The notes under the pieces: generated by a model | Databases searched by the model: none | What the model saw: only the letters and a program-made list of their open reading frames with translations | What the model was told of the DNA's origin: nothing | DNA from: Fonticula alba ATCC 38817 | Lineage: Eukaryota; Protista; Nucleariida | NCBI GenBank assembly: GCA_000388065.2 | Contig: KB932214.1 | DNA: 47,542 bases | Direction: 5' to 3' (one strand) | Program-made: the position numbers and the translations under genes | In this document: piece after piece, positions 9,463 through 46,449 of the stretch | Layout: every line of letters begins with the position of its first letter | Numbering within the stretch: the first letter of the stretch is position 1

Positions 9463-9595
9463 NNNNNNNNNNNNNNNNNNNNNNNNNNNNNNNNNNNNNN
9501 NNNNNNNNNNNNNNNNNNNNNNNNNNNNNNNNNNNNNNNNNNNNNNNNNNNNNNNNNNNNNNNNNNNNNNNNNNNNNNNNNNNNNNNNNNNNNNN
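9463..9595. other. Assembly gap (N run)
   Basis: 133 N, with a long G run just upstream. Confidence 0.99.
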
Positions 9596-27289: not shown

Positions 27290-30200
27290 CTACTCGGGCG
27301 GTGCCAGGATCTGGGCAGACACGTGGGAGGCCAGCGGCCGCGAGGCGGGATCGAAGGCCCAAAGGGAGTGGAGCAAGGACAGGGCCTTCAGTGCGATGGG
27401 CGGGGGGGCCGGGCGGCCGGGTGCGTCGAGGCGCAGGCCGGGCCCATAGGAGTCCGGTAGCTCCCCGGACTGAACGCGTGTGGCAATGTCCGACGAGAGG
27501 AGACCTGGGGCAGGGGGAGGAGGGGGGGGGGGACGAGGACGCAGAGGGTGGCATGTGTGTGAGGATGGGAGGCCGGCCCGAGGCATAGGAGGGTATAAAA
27601 GTGGGGGCGTACCGTTCCAGGGTCGCGCGTGGGACAGGAGATGCCAGATGACGGCGCCGAGGGAGAAGATGTCGGCAGCCATGTGGTTGAGTGCGGCTAC
27701 TTGGGTTTGCGGTGCGCTCATGGCGCCGAGGACCTAGGAACGACCAGCCGGCGGGGGGGGCGCGGGGGGGGACATGAATCGATGAGCCGGCGTCCGGTCG
27801 GGCTGTGACATACCGAGACCTTGGAGAATGGAGGACAGATCATCGCCACCCAGAGGGCCGGGGGTCGAGTCGAGCAGGTTCATCATGTCGGCCTGGTACC
27901 GCTCGAGGACCAGGGTGGAGGGGTCCTCGGTGTAGCCAAACAGCTTGACCACATTCGGGGAACTTTGCAGGGCCCTGCCGGTGGGAAAGCCGCGGAGGAG
28001 GAGCGACCATCAAGCCGGCGGGCAGGGGGGGGGGGGGGGGTACCCGGGCGGGGCGCAGCATTTTCCCGGCAGGAGGGGAGAGGTGGGTGACCAGGGCGTT
28101 AGACATGTGCATTGGGTGAGCGCGTGCAAGCAAGCGAGGCCCGAAACCCCATGGAGATACGAACCAGAGAATGGAGAGCTCATTCTTGAACATGGCCTGG
28201 ACCTGCACCAGCGTGACGGACATGTTCATTTGGGGGGCATCTGATGTTTGGCGCGATGCCAGAGTGTCGGACGGGTCGGGGGGTCAGTGGGCGTCCTACT
28301 GCGGCGGGTGCTCGGAGTGCGAGCTGAACGGCATCGCCGAAGATGGGCGCCGATACCCGGGGTCGGGGGAGGGGCGTGGGGAGGGCGACGCACCATTGGG
28401 CATCTTGATGACCAGGGGGGTGTCATTGGCGGACTCGAGGAGGCGACTGCTGAGGGCGGCCACCGGGAAGACGCCGCCCTGCGAGCCGCAGCCGCTTGGG
28501 GCCTTGCGATCGATGCGCAGATCCCGGTGGTACGAGAGGAGGAGGAATCCCGGGAGAGCAAGATCTGCACATGGGGATGGGCGGTCAGACGCGGCGTGGA
28601 GCCGGATTGGCGGGTACGCGCATGGGTAGGCCCCGGAAGGGCGGGATGCCGGCACTTGGGGCACATACCGAGGACGGTGTTCATGATGGTGCTATTCTCG
28701 TCGTCCGCGGCAGGGGGCTGGCACGTGTGCACGGGTGTAGCCGAGTGGGGGGGGGGGGGGGGACAGGATATGAGCATGCGCGGCCGAAGAAAGGCGGGGC
28801 AGGTCGATGATAGAAGGTGTGGCGCCGGAGGGCGGAGGCCCCGGCAGGTCAGGCCAGTGGGGTGGTTGGGCTGCCGGGAGACCCGGAGGGGGTCCACGGG
28901 AGAGGGGTGGACAAACGCACCGGAGCCGGTGCCAGGACGGGGGGCTTTGCCAGGCGTGCCCGTTTCACCACAAGAAAGTAGACAAGGGTCCCGGCAACGA
29001 GCAGGAGGATCAGCAGACACAGGCCCACCGAAACCCCGAGAATGGTGGTTCGGGCTGGTGGGTGCCATGGGCGTGCGCGGGGAGAGGAGGGGGGGGGGGG
29101 GGGAGCGAGCGAGACAGGCCTCGACAAGGGCAGCTCAGGTCAATAGGGACACCACCGATCCGCCAAGGGTGCCCGTGCGTGGGGGGAGAAGGGCGGGGTG
29201 GCATGGCTGGCGGGCGTGGGCGGCGGCGGAGATGGGCACAGGGTCAGGCGAAGGACGACGTACAGGTGGACATGCAAGACATGTCGGCCTGGCACCAGGT
29301 CAGCTCACAGAGGTGCTCGTCGGGGCCGGTGCACGTGTGGCAGCCCGGGGCACAGGGCACGCACTCGGCCATGCGCTGGCCGCCAAAGTGCTCGGGGTAG
29401 AAGCCCCCGGGGCAGGATTGGACACAGGTGGTCATGGGCTCGGTGACGGCCGACGCCACGGTGGCGCTGGTGTTGAGGCGGCGCGTGTGGGGATCCAGGC
29501 GGAGCATCAGCAGGCCGGCCTTGCAGGCGGTGCAGCCCGCTCGGTCGCACCGGTCGCAGCCGGCGGTGCAGGGGTGACACACCCGGGCCGCGGCGTCGAG
29601 CCAATGCTCCTCCACCGGGCAGTCCGTGTGGCAGGACCCCTGGCGCAGGAGGAGGTCCCCGCGACAGGAGAGGCAATGGGCCGGGGTGGGGCCGTCGCAC
29701 GTGGCACATGGCTGGACACAGGCCAGGCAGACCCCCCCGGCCTCGGGGGCGGTGAAGTACCCGGCAGGGCAGACCTCCAGGCAGGCCCCGGCATGGAGGT
29801 GACGCCCGACCGGGCATGCCACACAGGCAGCCTCGTCGCCGGGGCGCAGGCAGCCCTGGCAGGTGGGGTGGCAGGGCTGGCATGACAGCTGCCCGGTGGG
29901 GGAGATGCCCTCGGCCTCGGTGGCCGGGTCGCATGTGTCAATGCACCGGCCGGTGGACGGGCGCAGCCGGTGGTTGGGATCGGCGCAAACGGTGCATGCC
30001 CCGTGTGGCTCGATGCAGCGACTGCATGCGGCGCTGCAGCGAATGCACCGGCGCTCCGGGACATTCGGCCAGAAGCCGGTCGGACAGGAAAAGACACAAT
30101 CCCCGGGCGGGCCGGGCAGCAGGAGGAAGCCCTCGGAGCAGCTGGTGCAGGAGAGATCCGAGCGCGTCTTGGTGCCGGCGTCCGAGGGGGCCGGGTCGCA

Positions 30201-32615
30201 GGTGGTGCAGCCGGTCGGGCAGGGCTCGCACTGGCGAGGACCGGCATCCTTGGGCGCGGCCGCGCGGGCCCGGGCAGGAGCGAAGTGCCCGGCCGGGCAG
30301 GCGGCCATGCAGGCCCCCCGGAAGAGGAGGTCCTCGGCATTGGTGCAGGAGAGGCAATTGTCGGCGCCGGGGCCGATGCATTCGCGGCAGGAGCCATGGC
30401 AGGGGCGGCACTCGCCGCGGGCGAGATCCGAAAACATGCCCTGCGGGCAGCTGGTCACGCACATGGTCCCGGCCGGCCGGGCGGCGGCCCCGGCCGGGGG
30501 CACCTCGGCGGCCAGACGCAGGGACCCGCGCGGGCAGGCCGAACAGCCATTCGGCCCGGGGGCCTGGCACTGGGCACAGGAGGGGTCGCACCGGGCGCAG
30601 GAGATGGACGAGTCGGCGAACCAGCCGAATGCGGAGCAGGCATCGCGACATTCGCCGGCTTGGAGGACCTTGTTCTTGGGGCAGGACATGCACTGGGTGC
30701 TGGCCGGGCCGCTGCAGGTGTCGCCGCAGGTGGGCGAGCACCGGGCGCAATGGCCGCCAAGGAGGAGGGTATGCCGCCGGGGGCACTCTTCGACGCAATT
30801 GCCGTCCAGGGTGACCAGGCCGTAGCGGCACACGAGGCACTCGATGACGGCCGGGTCGTGGGGCGCCCGGCGGCAGAGTTCGCAATCGCGCCCGCATTCG
30901 ACACATTGGGAGGGGTCGTTCATGCAGTCGGGAACGCAATCGCCATGGTCCTTGGGCGGGGACACCGGGGGGATGGGCTGGCGAATGGTCAAGGGGGCCT
31001 GGCATTTGGTGCAGTCATTGACATTGGGGCCTTTGCACTCGGCACACAGGTTGAAGCAGGGCTGGCAGACATTGCCCGAGGAGAGGTCGTGGGTGTTGTA
31101 GTGGCCCGGCGGGCAGGCTTCCATGCAGACGTCATTGTGGCGGTGGAAGGTGGGCTCGCACATTTCGCAAATTTTGGCGCTCTGACACCGGGAGCAGCCC
31201 TGGCCGCAGGGGAGGCACCGCTCGCCGCTGGGGAAGGTCCCGGTCGGGCAGGAGGGCACACATTGCCAGTCGTTCAGGAAGAAGCCCGGTCGGCAGGCCG
31301 AGCACCGGGGGATGTCGGTCCCCGGGGCGGGGGCCGTGGCGTCGGTCGGCGGGGCGGCCGGCGGGGCGGTGCACCGGGCACAGGCAGCCGGGCAGGTGTC
31401 ACAGCGGTTGCCCTCGGCGGAGGTGAAGGTGCCGGCCGGGCAGGAGCCCACACATTGGCCCTCGTGCAGGTAGCGATCCTCTTGGCAGGTGAAGCAGCGC
31501 CCGGGGGCGCCATCATGGAGGGCGGCCTCGCAGGCGAGGCAGCCGGCGCTGCATGGCGCGCAGTGGGGCCCGCTCGGGGCGTTTGTCTCGACAAAGCCGG
31601 CCGGGCATATGGTGACACATGCGCGCTGGTGGAGGAAGAAGCCGGGCTGGCAGGCGCTGCATGGGCCGGTGGGGCCGGCACACGCGCCGCAGCCGGCAGG
31701 ACAGCCGGCGCACATGCCCCGCTTGGCGTCGGGGAAGAAGCCCCCCGGGCAGGAAGTGCCACAGGTACCCCGGTGGAGGACATGGCCGGTGTGGCAGGCC
31801 GTGCAGGCGGTCGGCCCGGTGCAGGTGGAGCACCCCGCCGGACAGGGGGTACATGCCTGCCCGGTGAGGTGATAGCCCGGGGCGCATGCGGTACACACGC
31901 CGCCGGCGGCGCAGGAGGTGCAACTGCTGGGGCAGGGGACACACTGGCGATCGGGCCCGGGCGCGTGGCCCGGTGGGCAGGCGCTGACGCAGGCATCCTC
32001 GTGGAGGAAGTGTCCGGCGGCACAGGCCGTGCAGTATCCGGCACTGGAGCACTGGGTGCAGCCGGAGGAGCAGGGCAGGCAGTCGTAGCCGGCCAGGTAG
32101 AAGCCGGGGTGGCAGCCGAAGCACCGGCCGCCCGGGTCGCAGTGGTAGCAATTGAGCGTGGAGCAGGGCCGACAGGACCACGGGCCCTCCAGGAAGAAGC
32201 CGGTCATGCATTCGGCGCACCGGCCCCCGGTGGAGGCGTAGTAGAGGCAATTTTCCACGAGATTCGGCTGGCAATAGGCCACCCCGTCGACGGTGTAGGG
32301 CTCCGAGGGGCAGGTGTCGGTGCAGGTGGCCGGATCGCCGAGGTGCAGGTATAGGCCGGGCCGGCAGCGGGTGCAGCCGGACTCGTTGCACGCGGTGCAC
32401 TCGGCCGGGCAGGCGGCTCGCGGTGCCGCGTGTGGCCGGGCAAGGGGCCCTCCGGCGTGCTTCGGAGCCGGGGCCGCGGGGGCATCGCCGGGGGGTGGCC
32501 GAGCGAAGGCCAGCGTCGTGAGCAACAGAACAAGCCCCAACAGGGACAGGCAGGGGAGGAGGGCCGGTGGCCCGGGGAACCGGCGTCGGGCCATTCGGGG
32601 GCCGAGGCCGGGCAT
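27290..32615 (-). CDS. Single-pass receptor with furin-like Cys-rich repeat ectodomain and a TKL-like kinase domain lacking subdomains VIb-VIII (pseudokinase or disrupted gene), ~1400 aa
   Basis: Exons 32615-29264, 29054-28921, 28717-28669, 28564-28394, 28240-28165, 27974-27814, 27733 or 27696 to 27613, 27504-27290. Signal peptide (LLPCLSLLGLVLLLTTLAFA), >1000 aa of CxxC repeats, TM ILGVSVGLCLLILLLVAGTLVYFLVV. Kinase elements GCGSQGGVF, LVIK, FKNE, NVVKLFGY, DIFSLGAVIW, WAFDPASRP are present; HRD, DFG and APE are not. Confidence 0.8.
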
Positions 32616-33717
32616 AGCTCGAGTGCCAGGGCAGCAAAAGGGGGCGGGAAGGAGACGGGGCGGTGGGGTGAGGCGAGTGCAGGCGGGCGGTGCCTCGAGC
32701 AGCAGCGGGCCTGCCGGCGGGTGGGTGTCTCTTGGCCGGGATCCCCCCAGGGTCGACTTGCCGGATCGGAGGCGGGGGAGACGCCGGCATCCGATGGGGC
32801 CCGGGCCGAGACGGCATACCAGCGCCGCAGCACCAGCGACATAATTTGTCGAGGGGGGCGGGGGGCAGGAGGCAGGGCGGGGCGAGGCACCGTGGTCAAA
32901 ACACATCTGGTCGCGTGTGCTTCGATCGCCGAGACATGGCACGATCGGGGATGTTCCCCCCCCCCCCTCCCCTTCCCGGCCCGGGTGTCTCCCCCCTCGG
33001 GGCCGGGGGTGACGTATACTGGCGGGGATTGCCGATCTTGTCCGTGGTGCCCGGGGGAGAGGGGCCATGTCGCGCGGCAGCGTGATGTGCTCTTCCCGGG
33101 GGGATTGGGTATCGGACCAGAGGCGCGCCGGGCAGCGAGGCAGATGCATGGGTCGCCCCGGGGCAGGCCGAGTGGACAGGGTGGCGGGAGGTAATTACAA
33201 TGGTGGCCCGGGTCGGGCTCGGTGCATGTGCATGTGTGTATGTGGCGCTTAACAGATGCCGGTGGCTGGTGCCCGGCGTGGGCGTGTCCGGCAAGACTCG
33301 GGCCAGGCCCTTTTCGGGACCGGGGCCGGCGCCGGGGGGGGGGGGGGGTCAAGACGGGCCGAGGGGCGAAATCAGGAACGCGGGACGCGATGCGGCGCAA
33401 CTTGCCCGGCGCCAAGAACCTCGACACCCATGGATTGCGATCTCGGCGCATCGTCTTGCCCTTGGGTCGCGCGTCACCCCCCCCCCTTCCGATCGTCTCG
33501 CTCGGCCCAGACGGCCTTGGTCATGTTGGAGGAGGAAAAAAGTCCGAGCGGCGGGAGGGGGGGAACAAACGGCCCGGCGCAGGGGCGGGGGGGAGGGGGA
33601 CTTCGTAGGTGTATCCCACCGAGCGGACGTATTTGGGCAACAGCAGAACACCCGTGGTTGCCGACCGCCACCGGGCACAGCCCGCCAAGGTGTCTCCCCT
33701 TCTCCCCCTGCCGCTCC

Positions 33718-33720
<3 letters not shown>

Positions 33721-33764
<44 letters not shown>

Positions 33765-33778
33765 GCGCGCGCGCGCGC
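33721..33778. repeat. Compound microsatellite (AC)15(GC)14
   Basis: Read directly; reverse complement of the (CG)n(TG)n type; lies between two head-to-head genes. Confidence 0.95.
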
Positions 33779-34303
33779 ACATAACCATAAATAAATCTGC
33801 CGGCAGCACTTTGTCGGCTCGCCCCGGGGAATAATGTGGGGGAGGTCGGTGTGGTTGTGGGCGAGGAGGAGGTTGCTGTCGTGGCGTGTGATGTGGGAAT
33901 GGTATTGCCAAATAGGGCGTGACTTCCTGGTGCCAACGATGCTTGTCATTCGTTGGGACTGATCGGCATGAAGCCGCATTGGCCGCCTTTCCCTGCGCCA
34001 AGAAGAGGGAGGCCATGTCCCTGGGGCCCTCTCGTCTGCCGCGTCCGGGAGCATGCCCGTCCAGGGGTGGAAAGCAGCACACCAGCCTTTTGTGCGAGAT
34101 TGCCAGAGGCGGCATCCCGAGCACGTTGTATCCCTCTCCTTCTCCCTCCCTCTCTTTCTCCCCCTCCCCCAGACCGCCCTCCCTTTTTCACGAGCCAGCC
34201 CAGCTCCAAGAGCCTAAGTTGCATCGACACGCACGCACGCACGCACGCACGCACGCACATCCACTCGCCCAACTTGATCGCCTGCTTTTAGCCATACGCC
34301 GAG

Positions 34304-35668
34304 ATGTTCGCACGCCTGGGGCCACTGGTCCTCCGGCGCCGGCCTGCATCTCGGTCGCTGGCGATGCTGGCCGCGTCGCGATCGGCGCCGCCGTCACCGA
34401 CGGGCCCCCCATCGAGCACCGGCCCCTTGGCAGCCCCGCAGCAGCCGGCACCGAGTCCGAGCAGCCGGTCCCCCGCGCCACGGCCAGGATGCCTGCCGGG
34501 GGGCAAGCGCTTGCCGGCGTCCGTGTGGCTTATCCAACTCCCGGAAGTCCCCCTGACGCCGGGCGAGCTCTACTGCCGGGACATCGAGGCCGGGCGAAAG
34601 CCCCTTCCGAAGGGCTTTGACTCGGTCAATTGCCTGCGGCTGCTGCTGCGGCTGTTGGGCTTGCAGATGCAGGCGTGCACCATGATGATGCTCGGCCGGC
34701 TGATGGGGTTCGACCAGAACACCATCCAGGTGCTGAGCCGGGAATATATCCTGCAGGGGCTGGCGATCCCGCCGCCGGGGCGCAAGACGGCCCCGCGCGC
34801 CGTACGCACGGTCCAATTCTCGGAGGAGGCCCTGGCCGAAGTGGAAGACCTGATGACCCGCGACCCGCCGGTGCCGGTGAAGGTGATCGGGTATCTGCTG
34901 GGGTTACCCCACCCGATCTTGTATCGCGGCATTGAGACCATGCTGCCGGATTTGATGCCGCCGGTGGAAGATCGGGGGCCCTGCCTGTGGCGCCTGCTGA
35001 TGCTGGCTTCCGTGCGCCCGCCGATGCACCTCCGGCAGATGGCGACGCTGCTGTCCGTCTCGCAGAGGGCCATCCACCGTGCGGTCGACATTTCGGCCTT
35101 CATGCCGACCTTGCAGATCGACAAGCCCTCGGCCTCGCAGTGGCGGCGGCTCCGGGAACTCCTGGCCCAGGAGGACCCGGTGCTCTCCCTGGCGGAGATC
35201 GCCGACCAAACCAACATCAACATCCGGACCCTGATGAGCTGGGGCCCATACATTGACCCCTCCTATGCGGCCCGGGCATGGGGGCAGCTGGACCAGATGC
35301 ATCCATTGCGATCGGGCTCCTCGCCGGCCGGCATGGCACTTCACAGGGGCACCACGGGCCAGACCCTGAGGGCCTTTCAAATTCGCTGGTATCGCCAGCT
35401 TTATCTGTTTGCCAAGCCGCCGGGCGCATCGAACGCCGGCTTGAAGTCGCACAATCGGCCACGCCAGCTGGCGACGATCACCATGGGGGACTATCTCGAC
35501 CGGTGTTGTCCCCTGCCGCTGGAGGCCATGGTGTCCATGGCGGCCGATGAGGGGGCCGACGCGGCGCCCCGCTTGGGCCCCGGCGACGATGTGCACTCCG
35601 AATCCCTCGCCCGGGACGACGCCCAAGACGGCGGGGGGGCTGCTGGCGCCGGCGTCGGGCCCGCCACG

Positions 35669-35701
<33 letters not shown>

Positions 35702-36424
35702 ACCACCGCCACCAGCGACCATGGCAACTGGTCGTCGGAGGACGAGCGGCTGCTGTGTCTCCTGTCTCTGCGGCCGGCCTTGTCGATCTTCGAGATATCG
35801 GTGCAGATGTCGGTCCCGAAGCACACCCTGCAGGAGCGCATCCGTCGGTTGAAGATTGACGAGGGCCTCCGGTCGAATGCCCCCTACATGCGCTTGACCG
35901 CCAGGGGGATCGCCGACTTCCGCCAGCTGGCCCTGGAGGCGGATCCCTCGAAGGCCGGGCATACGCGACGCTCGGTGCGGGACATTGCCCGGAAGTTGGG
36001 CCGCTCGCCGGATGAGGTGTTCTCCGCGCTGCACCGGTACTGTCCGGAGTACTTTTTCCTGGGGCTTCCGCCGGAGCTCGCGTCCGGCCCGGCGGGCATG
36101 TATGTCCCGGAGGAAAAACTGCAGCCCCTGCTGGCGGCGGTGGCGAACCAGTACCCGGTGCCGGTGTTGCACCAGGTGGCGGTGGATCTGGCCTGCTCCC
36201 TGCCCCAGGTGATCAACTCGCTGCGGGTCCATCTGCCGGACATGCCGCTGCCGCAGTACTCTCGGACCTTTTTGTATCGTCTCCCGGAGCTGGAGGCCTT
36301 CCTCAGCCAGGGGACCTGGCCATCACGGAGAAAGATGGCGGCGCATTTTGGCATCAGCCTGTACACACTCTCGCACGCCTTGCAGACCATCGGCTATGTG
36401 CCCGCTCAAAAGTCGACTGTGTAG
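34304..36424 (+). CDS. Uncharacterised intronless protein with ~8 tandem HTH-like repeats and a mitochondrial-presequence-like N-terminus (family copy A), 706 aa
   Basis: ATG-to-TAG ORF, collinear with 37513-39567. Repeats such as LSLAEIADQTNINIRTL, SVRDIARKLGRSPDEV, VLHQVAVDLACSLPQV, SRRKMAAHFGISLYTL. Confidence 0.8.
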
Positions 36425-36585
36425 AAGATCGGAAGAGCACACGTCGGAGCTGGAGGCCTTCCTCAGCCAGGGGACCTGGCCATCACGGAGAAAGATGGCG
36501 GCGCATTTTGGCATCAGCCTGTACACACTCTCGCACGCCTTGCAGACCATCGGCTATGTGCCCGCTCAAAAGTCGACTGTGTAGA
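36286..36585 (+). repeat. 140-bp direct duplication (36286-36425 and 36446-36585) of the 3' end of copy A, probably artefactual
   Basis: The two copies read identically by eye and are separated only by the adapter. Confidence 0.9.
36426..36445 (+). other. Illumina TruSeq adapter fragment (assembly artefact)
   Basis: AGATCGGAAGAGCACACGTC equals the first 20 nt of the TruSeq adapter and sits between two identical 140-bp copies. Confidence 0.95.
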
Positions 36586-37512
36586 TGTGTCTGCTGGGGA
36601 AAGAGAGCGAGTGGGCGAGAGCCTCGCGGGTGTTTGGTGTTTCGCCGCCGGCGCGGTGCGCTGGCCTAGAGGGAGACCCGGGCCCTGTACTTCGCGACAA
36701 TTGAGAAAGGCTCCTCGCTGCTGTGTGTGTCTTCCTGTGTATGTGTGTGTGTGTGCGCGCGCGATCTGAGCTTGCATGCCGGGTGGGGAGGGGGGGCGGG
36801 GGGGGGGCTGTTCGTCAGACACAATGGTGCCTTCAGGACGCCATCGGTCCGGGAGCCGTTGCTGACAGGCGGGTGCCGGCGACGGGGGCCGAGCGTGCAG
36901 TGCGCCTACCTGGCGGTGAGGTGCACACAAGAGTGGCTGGTCCTCCGGGCATCCGGGGATGGAGGGAGGGGGTGCATGAAAGTGCCTCGTCCCCGGGGAG
37001 GGAGGAGGGGTCTAGACGCGTGGCGGCACGGCCTTCGGGGCCAATCGAGCAGGCAGCCGGCTCCCGAGCGCCGGGGGGGCTCGGGCGGCGGTGCCGTGTG
37101 TTTGGATTCGCACGTGCGTTGGCATCTCGAGGCACACGCCTGTGCATGGGGGTGAGATTTCCGGCCCATGCCATGCCAGGAGGGCGGGGCTGGGGGCGGC
37201 TCTCCGCGGCCCGGGGCCTCCTGGCATGGGGGGGCCGCGCCTTGCCCGGGGAAGGGGAACGGCCGGGGGATGGGGCCCGACCACGCGTTGAAAGGCACGT
37301 CCCACTTCCAGGATGGAAGCTGACATGCTGGCCATGCTAGATCGACTACTCGCTTCCCCTCCTCGCTCTTCGTCGCTCGCCCCCCCCCCCCCCCTTCCAA
37401 CATCATATCCCTTCTGTGATTTTTTTCTCTCTCATCCCCCCCCCTCCTGGCCGGCGTCACACAGGCAGCCTCGTGTGACACTGGGACCACCTCCTCGGTG
37501 AAGCTGCTCCTG

Positions 37513-39567
37513 ATGCTCTTCGGCTTCAGGGCTGTCTTTTGTCGCACCATCGGGCTTTCGGTCAGATGGCAAGCAGCTGCTCGGTCGCTGCCGGGTTTCG
37601 TGCCGCGGAAGGCCGGCTCCCCATGGGCGCCTGCGGGCTGGAGTCGGCCGGCCGGGGCCGGTTGCCCTGTGCGCGAGGCATCCTCCACGGCGGTCGGGGC
37701 CCGAGACACGGGTGGAGATGACCGCCCATGTCCCGCCGGCGTTCATGGTGGGGACACCTATGTGGCCCTTTCGCCGGTGGTCGACCGTCGGCCGGCTGGA
37801 TGCGCGGGGACGCGCCTGTGCCGGGACATCGAGGCCGGGCTGGCCACCATGCCGCGGGCATTCCAGGATGTTGAGGACTTTCGCCTCTTCCTGCGTCTTG
37901 CCGGGGTCCGGAATGTCTATCTGTCGACGACCAGCGAGGCATCCATCGGCCGACTGGTCGGGCTGGATGTCACCACCACGCGACACCTGTTGGACCGGTA
38001 TGGCAAGGACTATGGCATTATGCCGGGATCCTGTGCCTGGGAGGGAGATGTGATGCCGGAGCATGCGACCTTTAAGGATGCCATGTGCCTGGCTCGGCGG
38101 GACCCGCCGATATCGCGTCAGCTCCTCGCGCGACTGACAGGCATGTCCACTGCCCAGACGAGGAGGGTCCTGGAGCATCATTTGTCGAGGGAGGAGCTGG
38201 CAAGGTTCCACCAGCACAGGGTGTGCCTCGGGCGCTTGGGGAAACTCCTGACCGTGGTTCCTGCCCAGCCGCTGGCAATCATGGCCGAGCTGCTGTCATG
38301 CACCCCGGGGGAGGTGCGAGCCGCCCTGGCGGAGCACTTCCCATGGTTCGAGTTTGACGATCGGGAAAGGATGAACCTGAAAAGCATCTGCCTGATTCGC
38401 CATGCGCTCGACACCGCGATGCTCGCGCCATTCTCGACCACTCCGCTGGTGGAAGACATGGCCAAGAAGACGGGCGTGACGCAGCGGAAAATCCACCAAC
38501 ATGGCCCGGGGCTGTGTCCGAAGTATATCATCGCCCTGAATGGGCCCCTGTCATCCGGGCACTTGGCCCTGCTGCGCTCGGAAATGGCCTCGGGCGAGCT
38601 GACCCTGAGCAAGGCGGCCGGGATGCTGAATCTGCCCATTTGGATGACGCACTGGTACATCAGGTACTACTTCCGGAATGCCCACATTCCGAGATCGGCG
38701 AGCCAGCCGATGACGCCGGCCTCGCCGAGCCAGGCCAGTCCCAGCCTCACCCTGGTGGAGTATTTGGATAGAACCCTGCCCGGTCCGAGCGTGTGGCTGG
38801 AGACGCAACAGGCCCTGCATTTGGGGGAGCAACCATCCGCGGGTCATTCGCTGGAGCAGCTGCTTGTCGAGGAGCTGCTGGGCGTCCTTGCGCTGAGGCC
38901 GCCACTGTCGAAGCCGGAGATGGCCATGCAGCTGGGGCGACCCCGGAGGGAGCTCCGAGCCGACTTTCCGGCAATGCGGGCAAAGGGGCTGTGGCAGAAC
39001 TGCCGCCTGGATCTGGAGTTGCCGGTGGAGGACATTTTGCACCTTCGGAGCCTCGGGGAGCAGGTGCACCCGGCCGGCGGGCGCATGCGCTTCACGGTGC
39101 GCGAGATTGCACGGCGGCTGGGTCGCCATCCGGACTTGGTGTTCTCGATGCTTCACCGGTATTGCCCGGAGTACTTCTTCCTTGCCCTGCCACCGGGGTC
39201 GGGCTCTGGCCCGGGGGGGATGTATGTGCCGGAGGGCAAGCTTAATGCCCTGCTGGTGGCGGTGTCAAACCGGTATCCCCCGCCGCTGCTGCACCAGGTG
39301 GCCGTGGATTTGGGCTGCACCCTGCCGCAGGTGATAAATTCCATCCGGAGGCAGAATGTCCATGCGGATGCTCGGCTGGAGGCGCCGCTTTATGCGCGGC
39401 ATCCGGCTGGACGCTATTTCGAGGTGGCCACCATCGCGGCCACATGCCACTCTCCGCTGAGGCATGCGGCCAGCCTGGTGCTGGGGTCTTCGACTTCGAC
39501 GATCAAGGCACTTGATTTTTTCCTGGAGAATAGACAATACTCGCCGCCCGGTGGTGCCTCCACATGA
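37513..39567 (+). CDS. Uncharacterised intronless protein with ~8-9 tandem HTH-like repeats and a mitochondrial-presequence-like N-terminus (family copy B), 684 aa
   Basis: First in-frame ATG is at 37513 (the ORF track starts at GTG 37498). Shares LCRDIEAG, RDPP and HRYCPEYFFL..GMYVPE.KL..LHQVAVDL.C.LPQVINS with copy A. Confidence 0.8.
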   Translation: MLFGFRAVFCRTIGLSVRWQAAARSLPGFVPRKAGSPWAPAGWSRPAGAGCPVREASSTAVGARDTGGDDRPCPAGVHGGDTYVALSPVVDRRPAGCAGTRLCRDIEAGLATMPRAFQDVEDFRLFLRLAGVRNVYLSTTSEASIGRLVGLDVTTTRHLLDRYGKDYGIMPGSCAWEGDVMPEHATFKDAMCLARRDPPISRQLLARLTGMSTAQTRRVLEHHLSREELARFHQHRVCLGRLGKLLTVVPAQPLAIMAELLSCTPGEVRAALAEHFPWFEFDDRERMNLKSICLIRHALDTAMLAPFSTTPLVEDMAKKTGVTQRKIHQHGPGLCPKYIIALNGPLSSGHLALLRSEMASGELTLSKAAGMLNLPIWMTHWYIRYYFRNAHIPRSASQPMTPASPSQASPSLTLVEYLDRTLPGPSVWLETQQALHLGEQPSAGHSLEQLLVEELLGVLALRPPLSKPEMAMQLGRPRRELRADFPAMRAKGLWQNCRLDLELPVEDILHLRSLGEQVHPAGGRMRFTVREIARRLGRHPDLVFSMLHRYCPEYFFLALPPGSGSGPGGMYVPEGKLNALLVAVSNRYPPPLLHQVAVDLGCTLPQVINSIRRQNVHADARLEAPLYARHPAGRYFEVATIAATCHSPLRHAASLVLGSSTSTIKALDFFLENRQYSPPGGAST

Positions 39568-39648: not shown

Positions 39649-39687
<39 letters not shown>
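39649..39687 (+). repeat. 39-nt poly-G run
   Basis: Read directly, ~80 nt downstream of copy B. Confidence 0.85.
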
Positions 39688-40219: not shown

Positions 40220-41990
40220 GACACAGGCGCCGAGATTGCCCGCTGACTGTGAGAAGGCGGCTGCGGCCTGCTGCGGCGCTGGGGGGTAGTGCGGTTCCCC
40301 TGTGCCTGCCGCTGATTGCTTCGGGTGGGACATCACTCCCGCTACGATGCTGAGCCGCGGCCGGGGAGAGGCAGGCTCTGGTGCGACAGTGGGCGAACGG
40401 GGGGGGGGGGGGCTGCGTGGGTTGTAGAGGGCCTCGGTCGGGACGAGGCAGCCGACGACGGCCCCTAGCCGGGGAGATTCATCTTGGTGCTGGCCACCGG
40501 CGAATGATGCTGTGTCCAGCCGGGAGGGGGCGGAGGAAGGAGCGGGCGGGAAGGGTCACCCAGGTAGTCGGGCACCATTGGTCGGCGCCCGGAAATGGGC
40601 CAGGACGTCGGCGAAGGGGCTGTCGCGGGGAGAGGCAGGGGAGATGGCCGGTGCCCGGGCGATGGGGCAGCTCCGCATGTCTTGCGCCAGGGTGCTCCCC
40701 CGAGCATCCGGCGGTCGAGGACTCGGTGACACAGCCCGGGCGAGATCCCCCCACACGAGGGTGCGCCTTTCCCTGGCTGGCGCGTCTCACGTCGGGGCAA
40801 GTGTCATTTCCATTGAAAGAGCACCTCCTCGAGGCGGGGGTGCCCATTGCCAGACAGCGTCCAAGATGGGCCCGGCCGGGGGCGACACACGCCGGTGTCG
40901 TGGGCGTCCACCTACCGAGGGCGGGATGAGACATCCATTCGACTGTCGGCGGCTTTGGTGCCAGATGAGGGGGACAAAAAATGTGCCCGCCCACGGGTGT
41001 GTCCTTTGGTGTCCTGGATGCCAGTCGCAAAGCAGAAGAGGCTACGGGCCATGTTGGCCGACTGGACACGCGTAGTGACACCACGGCCCGGGGAGGCGTG
41101 TGCCCGGGCCGGAGGCATGCCTGGCAATCCACCCAAAGCCAACAGCTCGATGTGGAGGACATCGCCCAAATCCGTTGGGCGAGCTGCCGCGGGAACAGGT
41201 GGGCTGATTGTGCACTCGGTGGCAAGGGCGTTGCCTAGACGTGGGCAACATGGCCCGGCGTGCGGGATGGCGGAGAGCATGACCCGGGTGGCACACCATG
41301 TGGGTGCCACGAGCCGGGATGGCTGCTGCTCTTGAGAAAGCCGGCACCGGCGCGGCGGCTGGATCCGCCCAAGCGTGTCGGGCGAGTGACGTTGGGCAAG
41401 TGCACCGGGCGCTTCTGGTTGGCGGAGTCGCTGGAACAGGGGCAGCCCAAGGGTGAGGGATGGGGGCGCGATCGAACACCGGAGCGCCTGGCGATCGCCG
41501 GTGCGCGCCCGATTGACCTGGCGCAACACGACTCTGGGACGGGGGTCGGCCCGTGGCTTTGGGGGCCGGCCTTTGGCCAGGGTCCGGAGGGCCAGTGACA
41601 GCGTCGGGCCGGCCGATACCGGCGATCGCTGAGGCGGGCCGCTGTCTCTCCCGATGGCGAGATTCTCCTCTGGCGGTGCCGGGGCAGGCAGGTGGTCCTA
41701 AGCGGTCGAGGGCGTGCGGCCCACGGCGGGGGGAGATAATTGGCGATGTGGGCTGGCGTCCGGGCGTTCACGCTGCCATGCTGCAGGGGCATTGCCTGGG
41801 GTGCCTCCCTCGGACCCTGGAGGCGGGGCTCGGCGACAGGAGGAAGGAGGTGTCGGCGGACCAGCCCGGGTGCGCGGCCGAGGGCGGCGGATGGCCGGGC
41901 GAGGCTGTGTTGTGTCGACGCGCATGTGCGCCTTGGTGCGAGTGGCGCAGCCCAATGTATCGGGCGTTGCACGCTGCTTTGGCGATTCGA
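40220..41990 (+). pseudogene. Decayed third copy (C) of the HTH-repeat family
   Basis: Collinear remnants in shifting frames: PEH..D..RDPP..LARLT (40699-40791), KRLRAMLA (41036-41059), LR/PLSLPMA with a +1 shift (41629-41659), EIIGDVGWRPGVHAAMLQGHC (41733-41795), PNVSGVARCFGDS (41951-41989). Boundaries approximate. Confidence 0.65.
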
Positions 41991-46396: not shown

Positions 46397-46449
46397 NNNN
46401 NNNNNNNNNNNNNNNNNNNNNNNNNNNNNNNNNNNNNNNNNNNNNNNNN
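46397..46449. other. Assembly gap (N run)
   Basis: 53 N, with G runs on both sides. Confidence 0.99.

What the first reader, a model, noticed from the sequence alone, without database searches (positions are those of the whole stretch)
34660..36410. About 8 HTH-like units strung along copy A, with variable putative recognition helices
Seen: units fitting x-x-[IM]-[AGS]-x-x-[LMFT]-[GSN]-h-x-x-x-x-[VIL]: TMMMLGRLMGFDQNTI, PVKVIGYLLGLPHPIL, HLRQMATLLSVSQRAI, SLAEIADQTNINIRTL, SIFEISVQMSVPKHTL, SVRDIARKLGRSPDEV, VLHQVAVDLACSLPQV, SRRKMAAHFGISLYTL. Several are preceded by a further helix and a (D/R)P(P) hinge. Established: EIAxxLGxSxxTV is the classic HTH signature (Hin, Tc3, LuxR and sigma region 4 types). 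Inference: three-helix modules whose recognition helices differ between units and paralogs, possibly a modular sequence-reading code.
Basis: partly seen in the sequence, partly recalled or inferred. Interest (0 to 1): 0.8.

Follow-up and report, generated by a model that had tools for sequence, protein, structure and literature searches.

The report
Nine-module HTH array protein, Fonticula
This amoeba gene encodes a transcribed, basic protein made of a string of small three-helix modules of the classic DNA-binding helix-turn-helix type. It belongs to an undescribed family found so far only in Fonticula alba, and what it binds and where it works in the cell are still untested.

Summary
All eight peptides sit at the stated places in one ORF (34304-36424, +), and they are helix 2-turn-helix 3 of true three-helix HTH modules. 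A unit profile built without copy A finds exactly these eight (6.2-27.7 bits; best of 200 shuffles 6.0).

The organism is Fonticula alba. The family has at least nine full-length paralogs, all in this species, and its ground plan is nine modules (5 + 4 around a disordered linker). The fifth module is degenerate in copy A.

Profile-profile tests link the modules to each other, to a regular ~13-unit F. alba array (98%), and to a bacterial IS630-type HTH array (94%). An AlphaFold model (pLDDT 70) gives confident modules joined by floppy linkers. Single modules superpose on Mos1, AsnC and LuxR-type HTH domains.

Both window genes appear in RNA-library contigs and have no introns.

Recognition helices vary among paralogs in modules 2-6 and 9 but are conserved in 7 and 8. 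The "code" idea is therefore only partly supported and remains untested. Mitochondrial targeting is suggested by N-terminal composition only.

The scan had already noted this family on other DNA of the same genome. An Illumina adapter with a 160-nt duplication after the stop codon is an assembly artefact.

The parts
34304..36424 (+). Gene A: intronless ORF of 706 aa (public model starts at M21, nt 34364, 686 aa). Basic protein, pI 9.5, net charge +16.
   Evidence: contigs of runs labelled RNA (label guessed) cover the ORF without joints
34304..34546 (+). N-terminal leader (residues 1-81) with no acidic residue and 6 Arg/Lys in the first 40. Resembles a mitochondrial presequence in composition only.
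   Evidence: helical amphiphilicity is not above shuffles
34562..34618 (+). Conserved head segment before module 1 (family motif around CRDIEAG...PLP.GF); pLDDT about 90.
34619..34759 (+). HTH module U1 (residues 106-152)
   Evidence: (U1-U2 94.6%)
34817..34951 (+). HTH module U2 (residues 172-216), RDPP hinge
   Evidence: (model 79-138 on the GcrA DNA-binding domain and others)
34970..35095 (+). HTH module U3 (residues 223-264)
   Evidence: U3-U6 96.2%; 27.7 bits
35126..35263 (+). HTH module U4 (residues 275-320). Pfam HTH_11 27.9 bits, above the cut-off of 25.
   Evidence: (U4-U6 95.2%)
35279..35419 (+). Module U5 (residues 326-372): degenerate in copy A, clear in the paralogs (..RWYIKYY.P).
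   Evidence: U5-U7 95.5%, U4-U5 90.9%; low pLDDT in A; not detected in A
35474..35518 (+). Short conserved bridge helix after U5 (family motif T..Y.RR.LP)
35519..35728 (+). Disordered low-complexity linker with a poly-Ala/Thr run; variable in length among paralogs.
   Evidence: pLDDT below 50; CCG repeat 35661-35710
35729..35857 (+). HTH module U6 (residues 476-518)
   Evidence: (model 386-441 on DosR, AsnC-type and GerE domains, Z about 6)
35894..36049 (+). HTH module U7 (residues 531-582). Its recognition helix and the following ..YCPEYFF motif are conserved across paralogs. Pfam HTH_23 and Sigma70_r4_2 match here.
   Evidence: (HTH_23 up to 35.3 bits in P0008)
36104..36241 (+). Module U8 (residues 601-646): three helices in the model and the most conserved module of the family. 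Not linked to the other units by unit-to-unit profile comparison.
   Evidence: best 20.7%; helix 3 identity 0.74
36275..36397 (+). HTH module U9 (residues 658-698)
   Evidence: (model 569-620 on Mos1 HTH, 3hos 70-117, rmsd 1.9 A, Z 6.2)
36426..36585 (.). Assembly artefact: 20 nt of Illumina adapter (36426-36445), then an exact second copy of the gene's last about 140 nt. Not part of the gene.
   Evidence: contigs of DNA, RNA and an independent soil metagenome all skip 160 nt here
37498..39567 (+). Gene B: tandem paralog (ATG at 37513), collinear with A. 45% identity over the last 200 aa, about 25% over the first 330.
40654..41706 (+). Weak collinear remnants of a decayed third copy. Only the first piece (40654-40860) is significant on its own.
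   Evidence: (E 1.6e-4)

Best explanation
Gene A encodes a member of a family seen so far only in Fonticula alba. The proteins are basic and about 620-800 aa long. Their ground plan is nine small three-helix helix-turn-helix modules (helix 1, proline hinge, helix 2, turn, helix 3) in two blocks of five and four, separated by a disordered linker. Copy A keeps eight recognisable modules. Most of the modules arose by internal duplication of one unit type; module 8 is not linked to the others by sequence. The same unit builds more regular arrays in this genome and resembles the N-terminal HTH of IS630/Tc1-mariner-type transposases. The most likely function is nucleic-acid binding, most probably double-stranded DNA. 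Several modules on flexible linkers would each insert helix 3 into a groove, as Myb repeats, the paired domain and Pipsqueak do. Modules 7 and 8 are nearly invariant among paralogs and would provide a shared contact or partner. Modules 2-6 and 9 have divergent third helices and would give each paralog its own target. Shown here: architecture, homology of the modules, fold type, presence in RNA-library contigs, family distribution. Inferred: binding, target type and cellular compartment.
For: Architecture: leave-A-out unit HMM finds eight modules. Unit-to-unit hhalign probabilities reach 90-96%, against at most 4% for reversed and 14.6% for column-shuffled controls. All nine unit types align in register.

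HTH identity: Pfam HTH_11 27.9 bits in A, HTH_23 25.5-35.3 bits in three paralogs, HTH_28 and Sigma70_r4 above cut-off in others. The pooled unit profile hits HTH domains in the PDB (9sgv 6.7e-5, TtgV 8e-4, MarR, ArsR, DeoR).

Structure: the AF2 model with 13 sequences has pLDDT 70.1, with most 10-residue blocks within modules at 75-93. VIA-align places single modules on DosR, AsnC-type and Mos1 HTH domains (Z 6.2-6.3, rmsd 1.9-2.7 A). Whole-length Foldseek matches are to other multi-HTH arrays.

Related arrays: 98.2% probability to the H696_00212 repeat and 94% to a Clostridiales IS630-type array.

Other: pI 9.2-10.6 in all members. RNA-library contigs cover both ORFs but not the spacer 36758-37348. 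Only 18 hits in 1.84 billion representatives; every full-length one is F. alba.
Against: No binding assay exists. Some third helices, notably in U7, are rather hydrophobic, which would also suit protein-protein contacts. U8 is not linked to the other units by sequence. Z scores near 6 are in the range the tool calls common, although they cover whole 50-residue domains. The whole-model PDB Foldseek search had no significant hit. pTM is 0.41, so the mutual arrangement of modules is unknown. The nine differences from a soil-metagenome strain are 6 non-synonymous to 3 synonymous, too few to show constraint.
Confidence: 0.6

Rival explanations
1. Mitochondrial version: the proteins are imported into mitochondria and act on mitochondrial DNA or transcripts, with paralog-specific modules choosing different targets. 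They would be a functional analogue of PPR, OPR or mTERF families built from a different fold.
For: Eight of eleven members (A, B, P0003, P0005, P0006, P0007, P0009, P0011) have no acidic residue for the first 30-80 residues, and all but one have six Arg/Lys in the first 40. Seven of eleven neighbouring genes have an acidic residue within the first 14. All members are basic. A multi-paralog family with divergent putative recognition helices fits one-factor-per-target systems.
Against: The evidence is compositional only. Helical amphiphilicity exceeds shuffles in just 2 of 8 leaders. No targeting predictor could be run. The genome is GC-rich and favours Arg, Ala, Gly and Pro. The related array H696_00212 has an acidic N-terminus with a KRPR motif that looks nuclear rather than mitochondrial. 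P0004 and P0008 lack such leaders. No HTH-array family is known in mitochondria (my knowledge; searches found none).
Confidence: 0.4
2. Nuclear version: domesticated transposase-type HTH arrays acting as transcription or chromatin factors on nuclear DNA, as Pipsqueak, CENP-B and Pax do.
For: The unit resembles transposase and resolvase HTH families (HTH_23, HTH_28, HTH_29, HTH_32, HTH_38, HTH_7). It matches the Mos1 HTH in structure and an IS630-type array by profile. AFDB neighbours are named 'Mos1 transposase HTH domain-containing'. There is no catalytic domain.
Against: Most members carry presequence-like leaders, and no clear nuclear localisation signal was seen in A or B. Matches to many HTH families are equally weak, so a transposase origin is not established.
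Confidence: 0.35
3. The modules have the HTH fold but no longer bind nucleic acid. The protein is a scaffold or adaptor that uses the modules for protein-protein contacts.
For: The best-conserved modules, U7 and U8, have hydrophobic conserved third helices and a conserved aromatic motif (..YCPEYFF) typical of an interface. HTH and winged-helix folds serve as protein interaction modules in several complexes (ESCRT-II and ScpB appear among the structural matches).
Against: High net positive charge in every member. The HTH sequence signature is retained well enough for Pfam DNA-binding families to score above cut-off.
Confidence: 0.2
4. The eight motifs are chance matches in a helical, Leu/Ala/Arg-rich protein from a GC-rich genome.
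For: The motif is short and degenerate and was derived from copy A itself. The genome's composition favours such residues.
Against: Shuffles, reversed sequence and column-shuffled profiles give nothing comparable. Independent Pfam, PDB-profile and structural evidence agrees.
Confidence: 0.02

Closest known systems
N-terminal HTH domains of IS630/Tc1-mariner transposases (Pfam HTH_Tnp_IS630, HTH_23, HTH_28; Mos1, PDB 3hos), and bacterial arrays made of them (Clostridiales protein P0018/P0019)
   Same: Three-helix unit with helix 1, an Asn/Asp-Pro hinge and then the HTH. Profile-profile match 94%. U9 superposes on Mos1 residues 70-117 at 1.9 A. Tandem repetition as in P0018.
   Different: No DDE/D catalytic domain. 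Nine diverged units rather than two (transposases) or near-identical repeats (P0018). Eukaryotic and lineage-specific. Has a presequence-like leader.
Fonticula alba H696_00212 (P0016), a 900-aa regular HTH array, and the larger arrays noted elsewhere in this genome
   Same: Same unit type, including the Pro hinge and the ..PEY motif after helix 3. 98.2% probability, E 4.8e-14. Thirteen units detected by this family's unit HMM, eleven of them at 4 bits or more.
   Different: P0016 is a regular array with a period near 52-57 aa and an acidic N-terminus. The family studied here has a fixed, collinear nine-module plan with individually diverged modules, a conserved head and a conserved U7-U8 core.
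Eukaryotic tandem three-helix DNA-binding arrays: Myb R1R2R3, Pipsqueak (four ~50-aa HTH repeats), the paired domain, CENP-B
   Same: Several ~50-residue three-helix modules on flexible linkers, each able to place helix 3 in a major groove. This is the best analogy for how it may work (established knowledge of those families).
   Different: No Pfam match to Myb, HTH_psq, PAX or CENP-B_N in A or B. No regularly spaced tryptophans. Nine modules is more than in any of these.
Organellar helical-repeat nucleic-acid binders (PPR, OPR, HPR, mTERF)
   Same: Only if the mitochondrial reading is right: nuclear-encoded, lineage-expanded, basic repeat proteins with presequences and paralog-specific surfaces.
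   Different: Different fold and repeat length (two-helix hairpins of 30-38 aa forming solenoids). No Pfam match. The model shows separate modules, not a solenoid.
   Same: Tandem helical repeats whose variable positions could set specificity.
   Different: TALE repeats are near-identical 33-35-aa two-helix units with one variable di-residue, each reading one base. Here the units are 45-65 aa, highly diverged and joined by linkers. No code can be read from the data.

Membership tests
Helix-turn-helix superfamily (simple tri-helical HTH) | Three-helix core with a sharp turn between helices 2 and 3, and the sequence signature (hydrophobic-Ala/Gly...Leu-Gly-hydrophobic-Ser...Val) | tested here: met
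   Pfam HTH families above the curated cut-off; unit profile against the PDB; DSSP of the model shows eight clear three-helix modules plus the degenerate fifth; superposition at rmsd 1.9-2.7 A.
Helix-turn-helix superfamily (simple tri-helical HTH) | Binds nucleic acid through helix 3 | not testable with these tools
   Only indirect support: pI 9.2-10.6.
Winged helix-turn-helix | Beta-hairpin wing after helix 3 | tested here: not met
   DSSP of the model shows no strands apart from isolated bridge residues, and units are only 45-55 aa.
Tc1/mariner or IS630 transposase | DDE/D catalytic domain after the HTH region | tested here: not met
   No transposase catalytic family in Pfam scans of A, B and eight relatives. 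The paralogs are only about 30% identical, so they are not recent transposon copies.
Tc1/mariner or IS630 transposase | HTH unit of the transposase type | tested here: inconclusive
   94% profile match to an IS630-type array and a Mos1 superposition, but AsnC, LuxR, MarR and IclR types match about as well.
Myb/SANT repeats | Three regularly spaced Trp per ~52-aa repeat; Pfam Myb_DNA-binding | tested here: not met
   No Pfam Myb or SANT hit at E up to 1. The unit alignment has no conserved Trp columns.
Pipsqueak / CENP-B / paired | Match to HTH_psq, CENP-B_N or PAX profiles | tested here: not met
   Absent from the Pfam results.
PPR / OPR / mTERF organellar repeats | Characteristic 30-38-aa repeat profiles forming a solenoid | tested here: not met
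   No Pfam hit. Modules are separated by low-confidence linkers; pTM 0.41.
Mitochondrial matrix proteins | Cleavable N-terminal amphipathic, Arg-rich presequence without acidic residues | tested here: inconclusive
   The composition fits in 8 of 11 members and not in the neighbouring genes. Amphiphilicity is not above shuffles in 6 of 8. No predictor or localisation data were available.
TALE-like modular code | Near-identical repeats with one hypervariable specificity position per repeat | tested here: not met
   Units share 5-31% identity with the first unit of the alignment and vary throughout. Variation is spread over whole helices.

The most novel reading that the evidence does not exclude
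The family, together with the larger HTH arrays of this genome, is a new class of nuclear-encoded mitochondrial gene-expression factors. The proteins would be imported through their Arg-rich leaders and bind specific mitochondrial DNA or RNA sites through paralog-specific third helices of modules 2-6 and 9, while the invariant modules 7-8 dock onto a common partner such as the polymerase, the ribosome or the nucleoid. This would be an HTH-based counterpart of PPR, OPR and mTERF systems that arose independently in a nucleariid amoeba.
Probability: 0.25. Interest if true: 0.8.

Novelty: new variant of a known kind. Interest (0 to 1): 0.5.

Why it matters
Tandem arrays of nucleic-acid-reading modules (zinc fingers, TALE, PPR, PUF) are rare, and each has become a research tool. 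This is an undescribed, transcribed, species-restricted family with at least nine full-length paralogs plus fragments and larger related arrays. It strings up to nine classic HTH modules together, with a conserved two-module core and divergent remaining modules. If the modules bind independently and additively, the family would be a natural test case for long-site recognition by HTH arrays. If the leaders are true presequences, it would be the first HTH-based organellar factor family, in the sister lineage of fungi. If neither holds, it is still a clear case of lineage-specific expansion that current annotation calls 'hypothetical protein', and the public gene models need correcting.

Tried and rejected
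1. Word-indexed homology searches with A and with P0016 returned only the queries themselves because of the candidate cap. The exhaustive representative search was needed.

2. AF2 with the two-sequence alignment was useless as a model (pLDDT 38). The 13-sequence alignment was needed.

3. Whole-model Foldseek against the PDB and Swiss-Prot gave no significant match, as expected for a flexible multi-domain chain. The ESM Atlas shape and feature searches gave only low-score leads, all to multi-HTH proteins.

An orthologue-versus-paralogue test of the recognition helices was therefore not possible.

5. One 99.9% outlier among column-shuffled controls did not recur when stale output files were removed. 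I treat it as a script artefact.

6. Literature searches for Fonticula plus HTH, Fonticula mitochondrial genome, tandem HTH repeats and transposase-derived arrays found nothing on this family. In the mitochondrial papers, 'tandem helix-turn-helix' means PPR-type hairpins.

7. The hydrophobic-moment test of the leaders was inconclusive.

8. Nine SNPs against a soil-metagenome strain are too few for a selection test.

9. No telomere repeats were seen in the last 300 nt of the window, which is the scaffold end.
Full report
**What is there**

The stretch lies inside one long + strand ORF, 34304-36424 (706 aa). A second, collinear ORF follows at 37498-39567 (689 aa). The two share 45% identity over the last ~200 residues and about 25% over the first ~330. 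The window has about 68% G+C, so every frame is full of spurious ORFs. The + frame is the real one because it is the frame conserved in the paralogs.

An exhaustive profile search of 1.84 billion representative proteins found only 18 hits. All those with a source name are hypothetical proteins of Fonticula alba: H696_06061, _05870, _04187, _04689, _05961, _05449, _05305 and the array H696_00212. The exceptions are one unnamed 297-aa protein and a Clostridiales 'transposase'. Gene A lies at 528890-530950 of the 542068-bp scaffold KB932214.1, so the window is the last 47.5 kb of that scaffold.

**Check of the observation**

All eight peptides are present at the stated coordinates. The motif was drawn from A, so I made a fairer test.

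- I cut the family alignment (A3, 13 sequences) into units and pooled 89 units into alignment A4.
- I rebuilt the unit HMM without any unit from A and searched A with it.
- It finds exactly the eight listed places at 6.2-27.7 bits. Two hundred shuffles of A reach at most 6.0 bits, and reversed A gives nothing above zero.
- The HMM still contains the paralogous units of the other members, so part of this signal is paralogy rather than repeat similarity. The three weakest units (6.2, 7.0 and 7.7 bits) lie only just above the shuffle maximum.

A test that does not depend on paralogy is profile against profile between different unit positions:

| Unit pair | hhalign probability |
|---|---|
| U3-U6 | 96.2% |
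| U5-U7 | 95.5% |
| U4-U6 | 95.2% |
| U1-U2 | 94.6% |
| U5-U6 | 91.9% |
| U4-U5 | 90.9% |
| U9 to U4 and U6 | about 75% |

Controls stayed low: reversed profiles at most 4% and 108 column-shuffled profiles at most 14.6%. A single outlier did not recur once stale files were removed. U8 is the exception. Its best link is 20.7%, so by sequence alone it is not shown to be the same kind of unit.

**Anatomy**

The listed 16-residue peptides are helix 2, the turn and helix 3. Its proline is the only column conserved in at least 70% of all 89 units.

The family plan has nine modules, not eight. An extra one (U5, A residues 326-372) is plain in the paralogs (..LG.P...LRWYIKYY.P) but degenerate in A. 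There it is modelled with low confidence and the unit HMM does not detect it.

The order along the protein is:

- an Arg-rich, acid-free leader;
- a conserved head;
- U1-U5;
- a short conserved bridge helix;
- a disordered low-complexity linker of variable length;
- U6-U9.

**Fold**

With two sequences AlphaFold failed (pLDDT 38). With the 13-sequence family alignment the mean pLDDT is 70.1, and most 10-residue blocks within modules lie at 75-93. Linkers are below 50 and pTM is 0.41. The modules are therefore confident but their mutual arrangement is not.

DSSP gives helix-helix-turn-helix triplets for U1-U4 and U6-U9, with no beta wing. An aligner that does not depend on Foldseek places single modules on HTH DNA-binding domains:

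- U6 on DosR (Z 6.3) and on an AsnC-type domain (Z 6.2, rmsd 2.1 A, 24% identity);
- U9 on the second HTH of the Mos1 transposase (Z 6.2, rmsd 1.9 A over 48 residues);
- U2 on the GcrA DNA-binding domain.

Nearly all of the 50 best rows are HTH or winged-helix domains. The Z values are modest in absolute terms, as the tool warns, but each covers a whole 50-residue domain.

At the sequence level, the pooled unit profile hits PDB chains that are almost all HTH regulators or transposases (best 6.7e-5). Pfam HTH families pass their curated cut-offs in several members:

| Protein | Pfam family | Module | Bits |
|---|---|---|---|
| A | HTH_11 | U4 | 27.9 |
| P0003 | HTH_23 | U7 | 25.5 |
| P0006 | HTH_23 | U7 | 28.4 |
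| P0008 | HTH_23 | U7 | 35.3 |
| P0009 | HTH_28 | U5 | 27.3 |
| P0007 | Sigma70_r4 | U6 | 24.4 |

Whole-length Foldseek matches in AlphaFold DB, after the paralogs, are other multi-HTH arrays from a fungus and from bacteria.

**Relatives of the unit**

The unit profile matches the repeat of the regular F. alba array H696_00212 at 98.2% (E 4.8e-14, 47 columns). The match includes the hinge proline and the ..PEY motif after helix 3. It matches the repeat of the Clostridiales array, which Pfam calls HTH_Tnp_IS630 (ten stretches, 224.9 bits), at 94%. The unit HMM reports thirteen units in H696_00212, eleven of them at 4 bits or more.

The simplest history is that one HTH unit of the transposase/resolvase kind was amplified into arrays in this lineage. 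One such array then froze into the nine-module plan, and its modules diverged individually. None of the proteins has a catalytic domain. The paralogs are only about 30% identical, so these are not active transposons.

**Do the recognition helices vary?**

Among nine full-length paralogs, the mean pairwise identity of helix 3 is:

| Module | Helix 3 identity |
|---|---|
| U6 | 0.14 |
| U9 | 0.18 |
| U3 | 0.19 |
| U2 | 0.27 |
| U4 | 0.32 |
| U5 | 0.36 |
| U1 | 0.38 |
| U7 | 0.68 |
| U8 | 0.74 |

In U3, helix 3 (0.19) is far more variable than helices 1 and 2 (0.50 and 0.47). In U7 and U8 it is the most conserved part of the module, or close to it.

Nothing in the data indicates a one-repeat-one-letter code. 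The units are long, very diverged and linked by disordered segments, which is the logic of Myb or zinc-finger arrays rather than of TALE or PPR solenoids.

**Expression and gene structure**

Contigs of two runs labelled RNA (the label is guessed by the tool) cover gene A (34431-36374) and gene B (37407-39540). They have zero depth in the spacer 36758-37348 and beyond 39713, and show no joints inside the ORFs. Both genes therefore appear to be transcribed and intronless. The pattern argues against DNA carry-over but does not exclude it.

An independent soil metagenome carries a near-identical strain with nine differences, six non-synonymous and three synonymous, too few to judge selection.

**Compartment**

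In A the first acidic residue is at position 81. In B, P0003, P0005, P0006, P0007, P0009 and P0011 it lies at 31-64. The first 40 residues hold six or seven Arg/Lys in each.

Among eleven neighbouring gene models, seven have an acidic residue within the first 14 residues. Several of the rest look like signal peptides. This fits mitochondrial presequences.

However, the helical hydrophobic moment exceeds shuffles in only two of eight leaders. The genome's composition favours Arg, Ala and Gly. Two members and the related array H696_00212 lack such leaders. I rate mitochondrial targeting at about 0.4.

**Comparison with known systems**

In working principle the closest are eukaryotic tandem three-helix arrays (Myb, Pipsqueak, paired, CENP-B). 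In sequence and structure the closest are the HTH domains of IS630/Tc1-mariner transposases. Membership in any of these families fails on defining features:

- no catalytic domain;
- no spaced tryptophans;
- no matching Pfam profile.

Literature searches found no description of this family. The scan's own notes show that the same family had already been seen on other pieces of this genome. The follow-ups there reached similar readings: an undescribed, Fonticula-only family with an unproven mitochondrial role. I treated those notes as leads only.

**Verdict**

This is a new, lineage-restricted variant of a known kind (tandem HTH arrays) of moderate interest. The interest would rise sharply if mitochondrial localisation and modular binding were shown.

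Noticed in passing
window 36285-36585: Twenty nt of Illumina TruSeq adapter (36426-36445) sit two bases after gene A's stop codon, followed by an exact repeat of the gene's last ~140 nt (period 160, 100% identity). Contigs from the source DNA, from RNA and from an independent soil metagenome all skip 160 nt here, so this is an assembly artefact in the public scaffold. The protein is unaffected.
   Followed up: yes
window 37513-39060 versus 37498-39567 (L001 13150-14697): The public model of gene B (P0002, 516 aa) stops without a stop codon at window 39060. The ORF runs on to 39567, and RNA-library contigs cover it to 39540. The model therefore lacks the last 168 residues, which hold the family's most conserved modules, U7-U9.
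   Followed up: partly
window 40654-41706 (+): Collinear weak matches to family-profile positions 116-184 (E 1.6e-4), 232-266, 336-383 and 459-489, in the same orientation as A and B. This is probably a decayed third tandem copy.
   Followed up: partly
scaffolds KB932206-KB932217 (loci L001-L008): Six of eight family loci lie within the outer fifth of their scaffold half-length (6-72 kb from an end). My binomial arithmetic gives p about 0.001 if positions were uniform. Scaffold ends need not be chromosome ends. Several loci sit beside large furin-like/VSP-like cysteine-rich receptor genes, another expanded family.
   Followed up: partly
L002 7516-9534: Immediately upstream of H696_06061 (P0003) lies another family copy split over three reading frames (profile positions 41-294, 305-403, 368-632). 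It is annotated as two separate proteins of 252 and 369 aa. It is either a pseudogene or a copy broken by assembly errors.
   Followed up: no
window 39649-39687, 37380-37394 and 16 other places: Long G or C homopolymer runs of 15-39 nt are scattered through intergenic DNA, including G39 about 80 nt after gene B's stop and C15 about 120 nt before its start. Contigs of the source reads break at several of them. Whether they are real sequence features or assembly noise was not checked.
   Followed up: no
window 9463-9595 and 46397-46449: Two runs of N (assembly gaps). The second is flanked by G-runs.
   Followed up: no
window 29244-33149 (-): A 1301-aa ORF with repeated furin-like/growth-factor-receptor cysteine-rich repeats and a weak match to Giardia VSP. 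The public model is 1406 aa.
   Followed up: no
window 33700-33800 and 34131-34258: Dinucleotide and short microsatellites ((CA)n, (GA)n-type, CACG x 7.8) lie in the spacer upstream of gene A.
   Followed up: no
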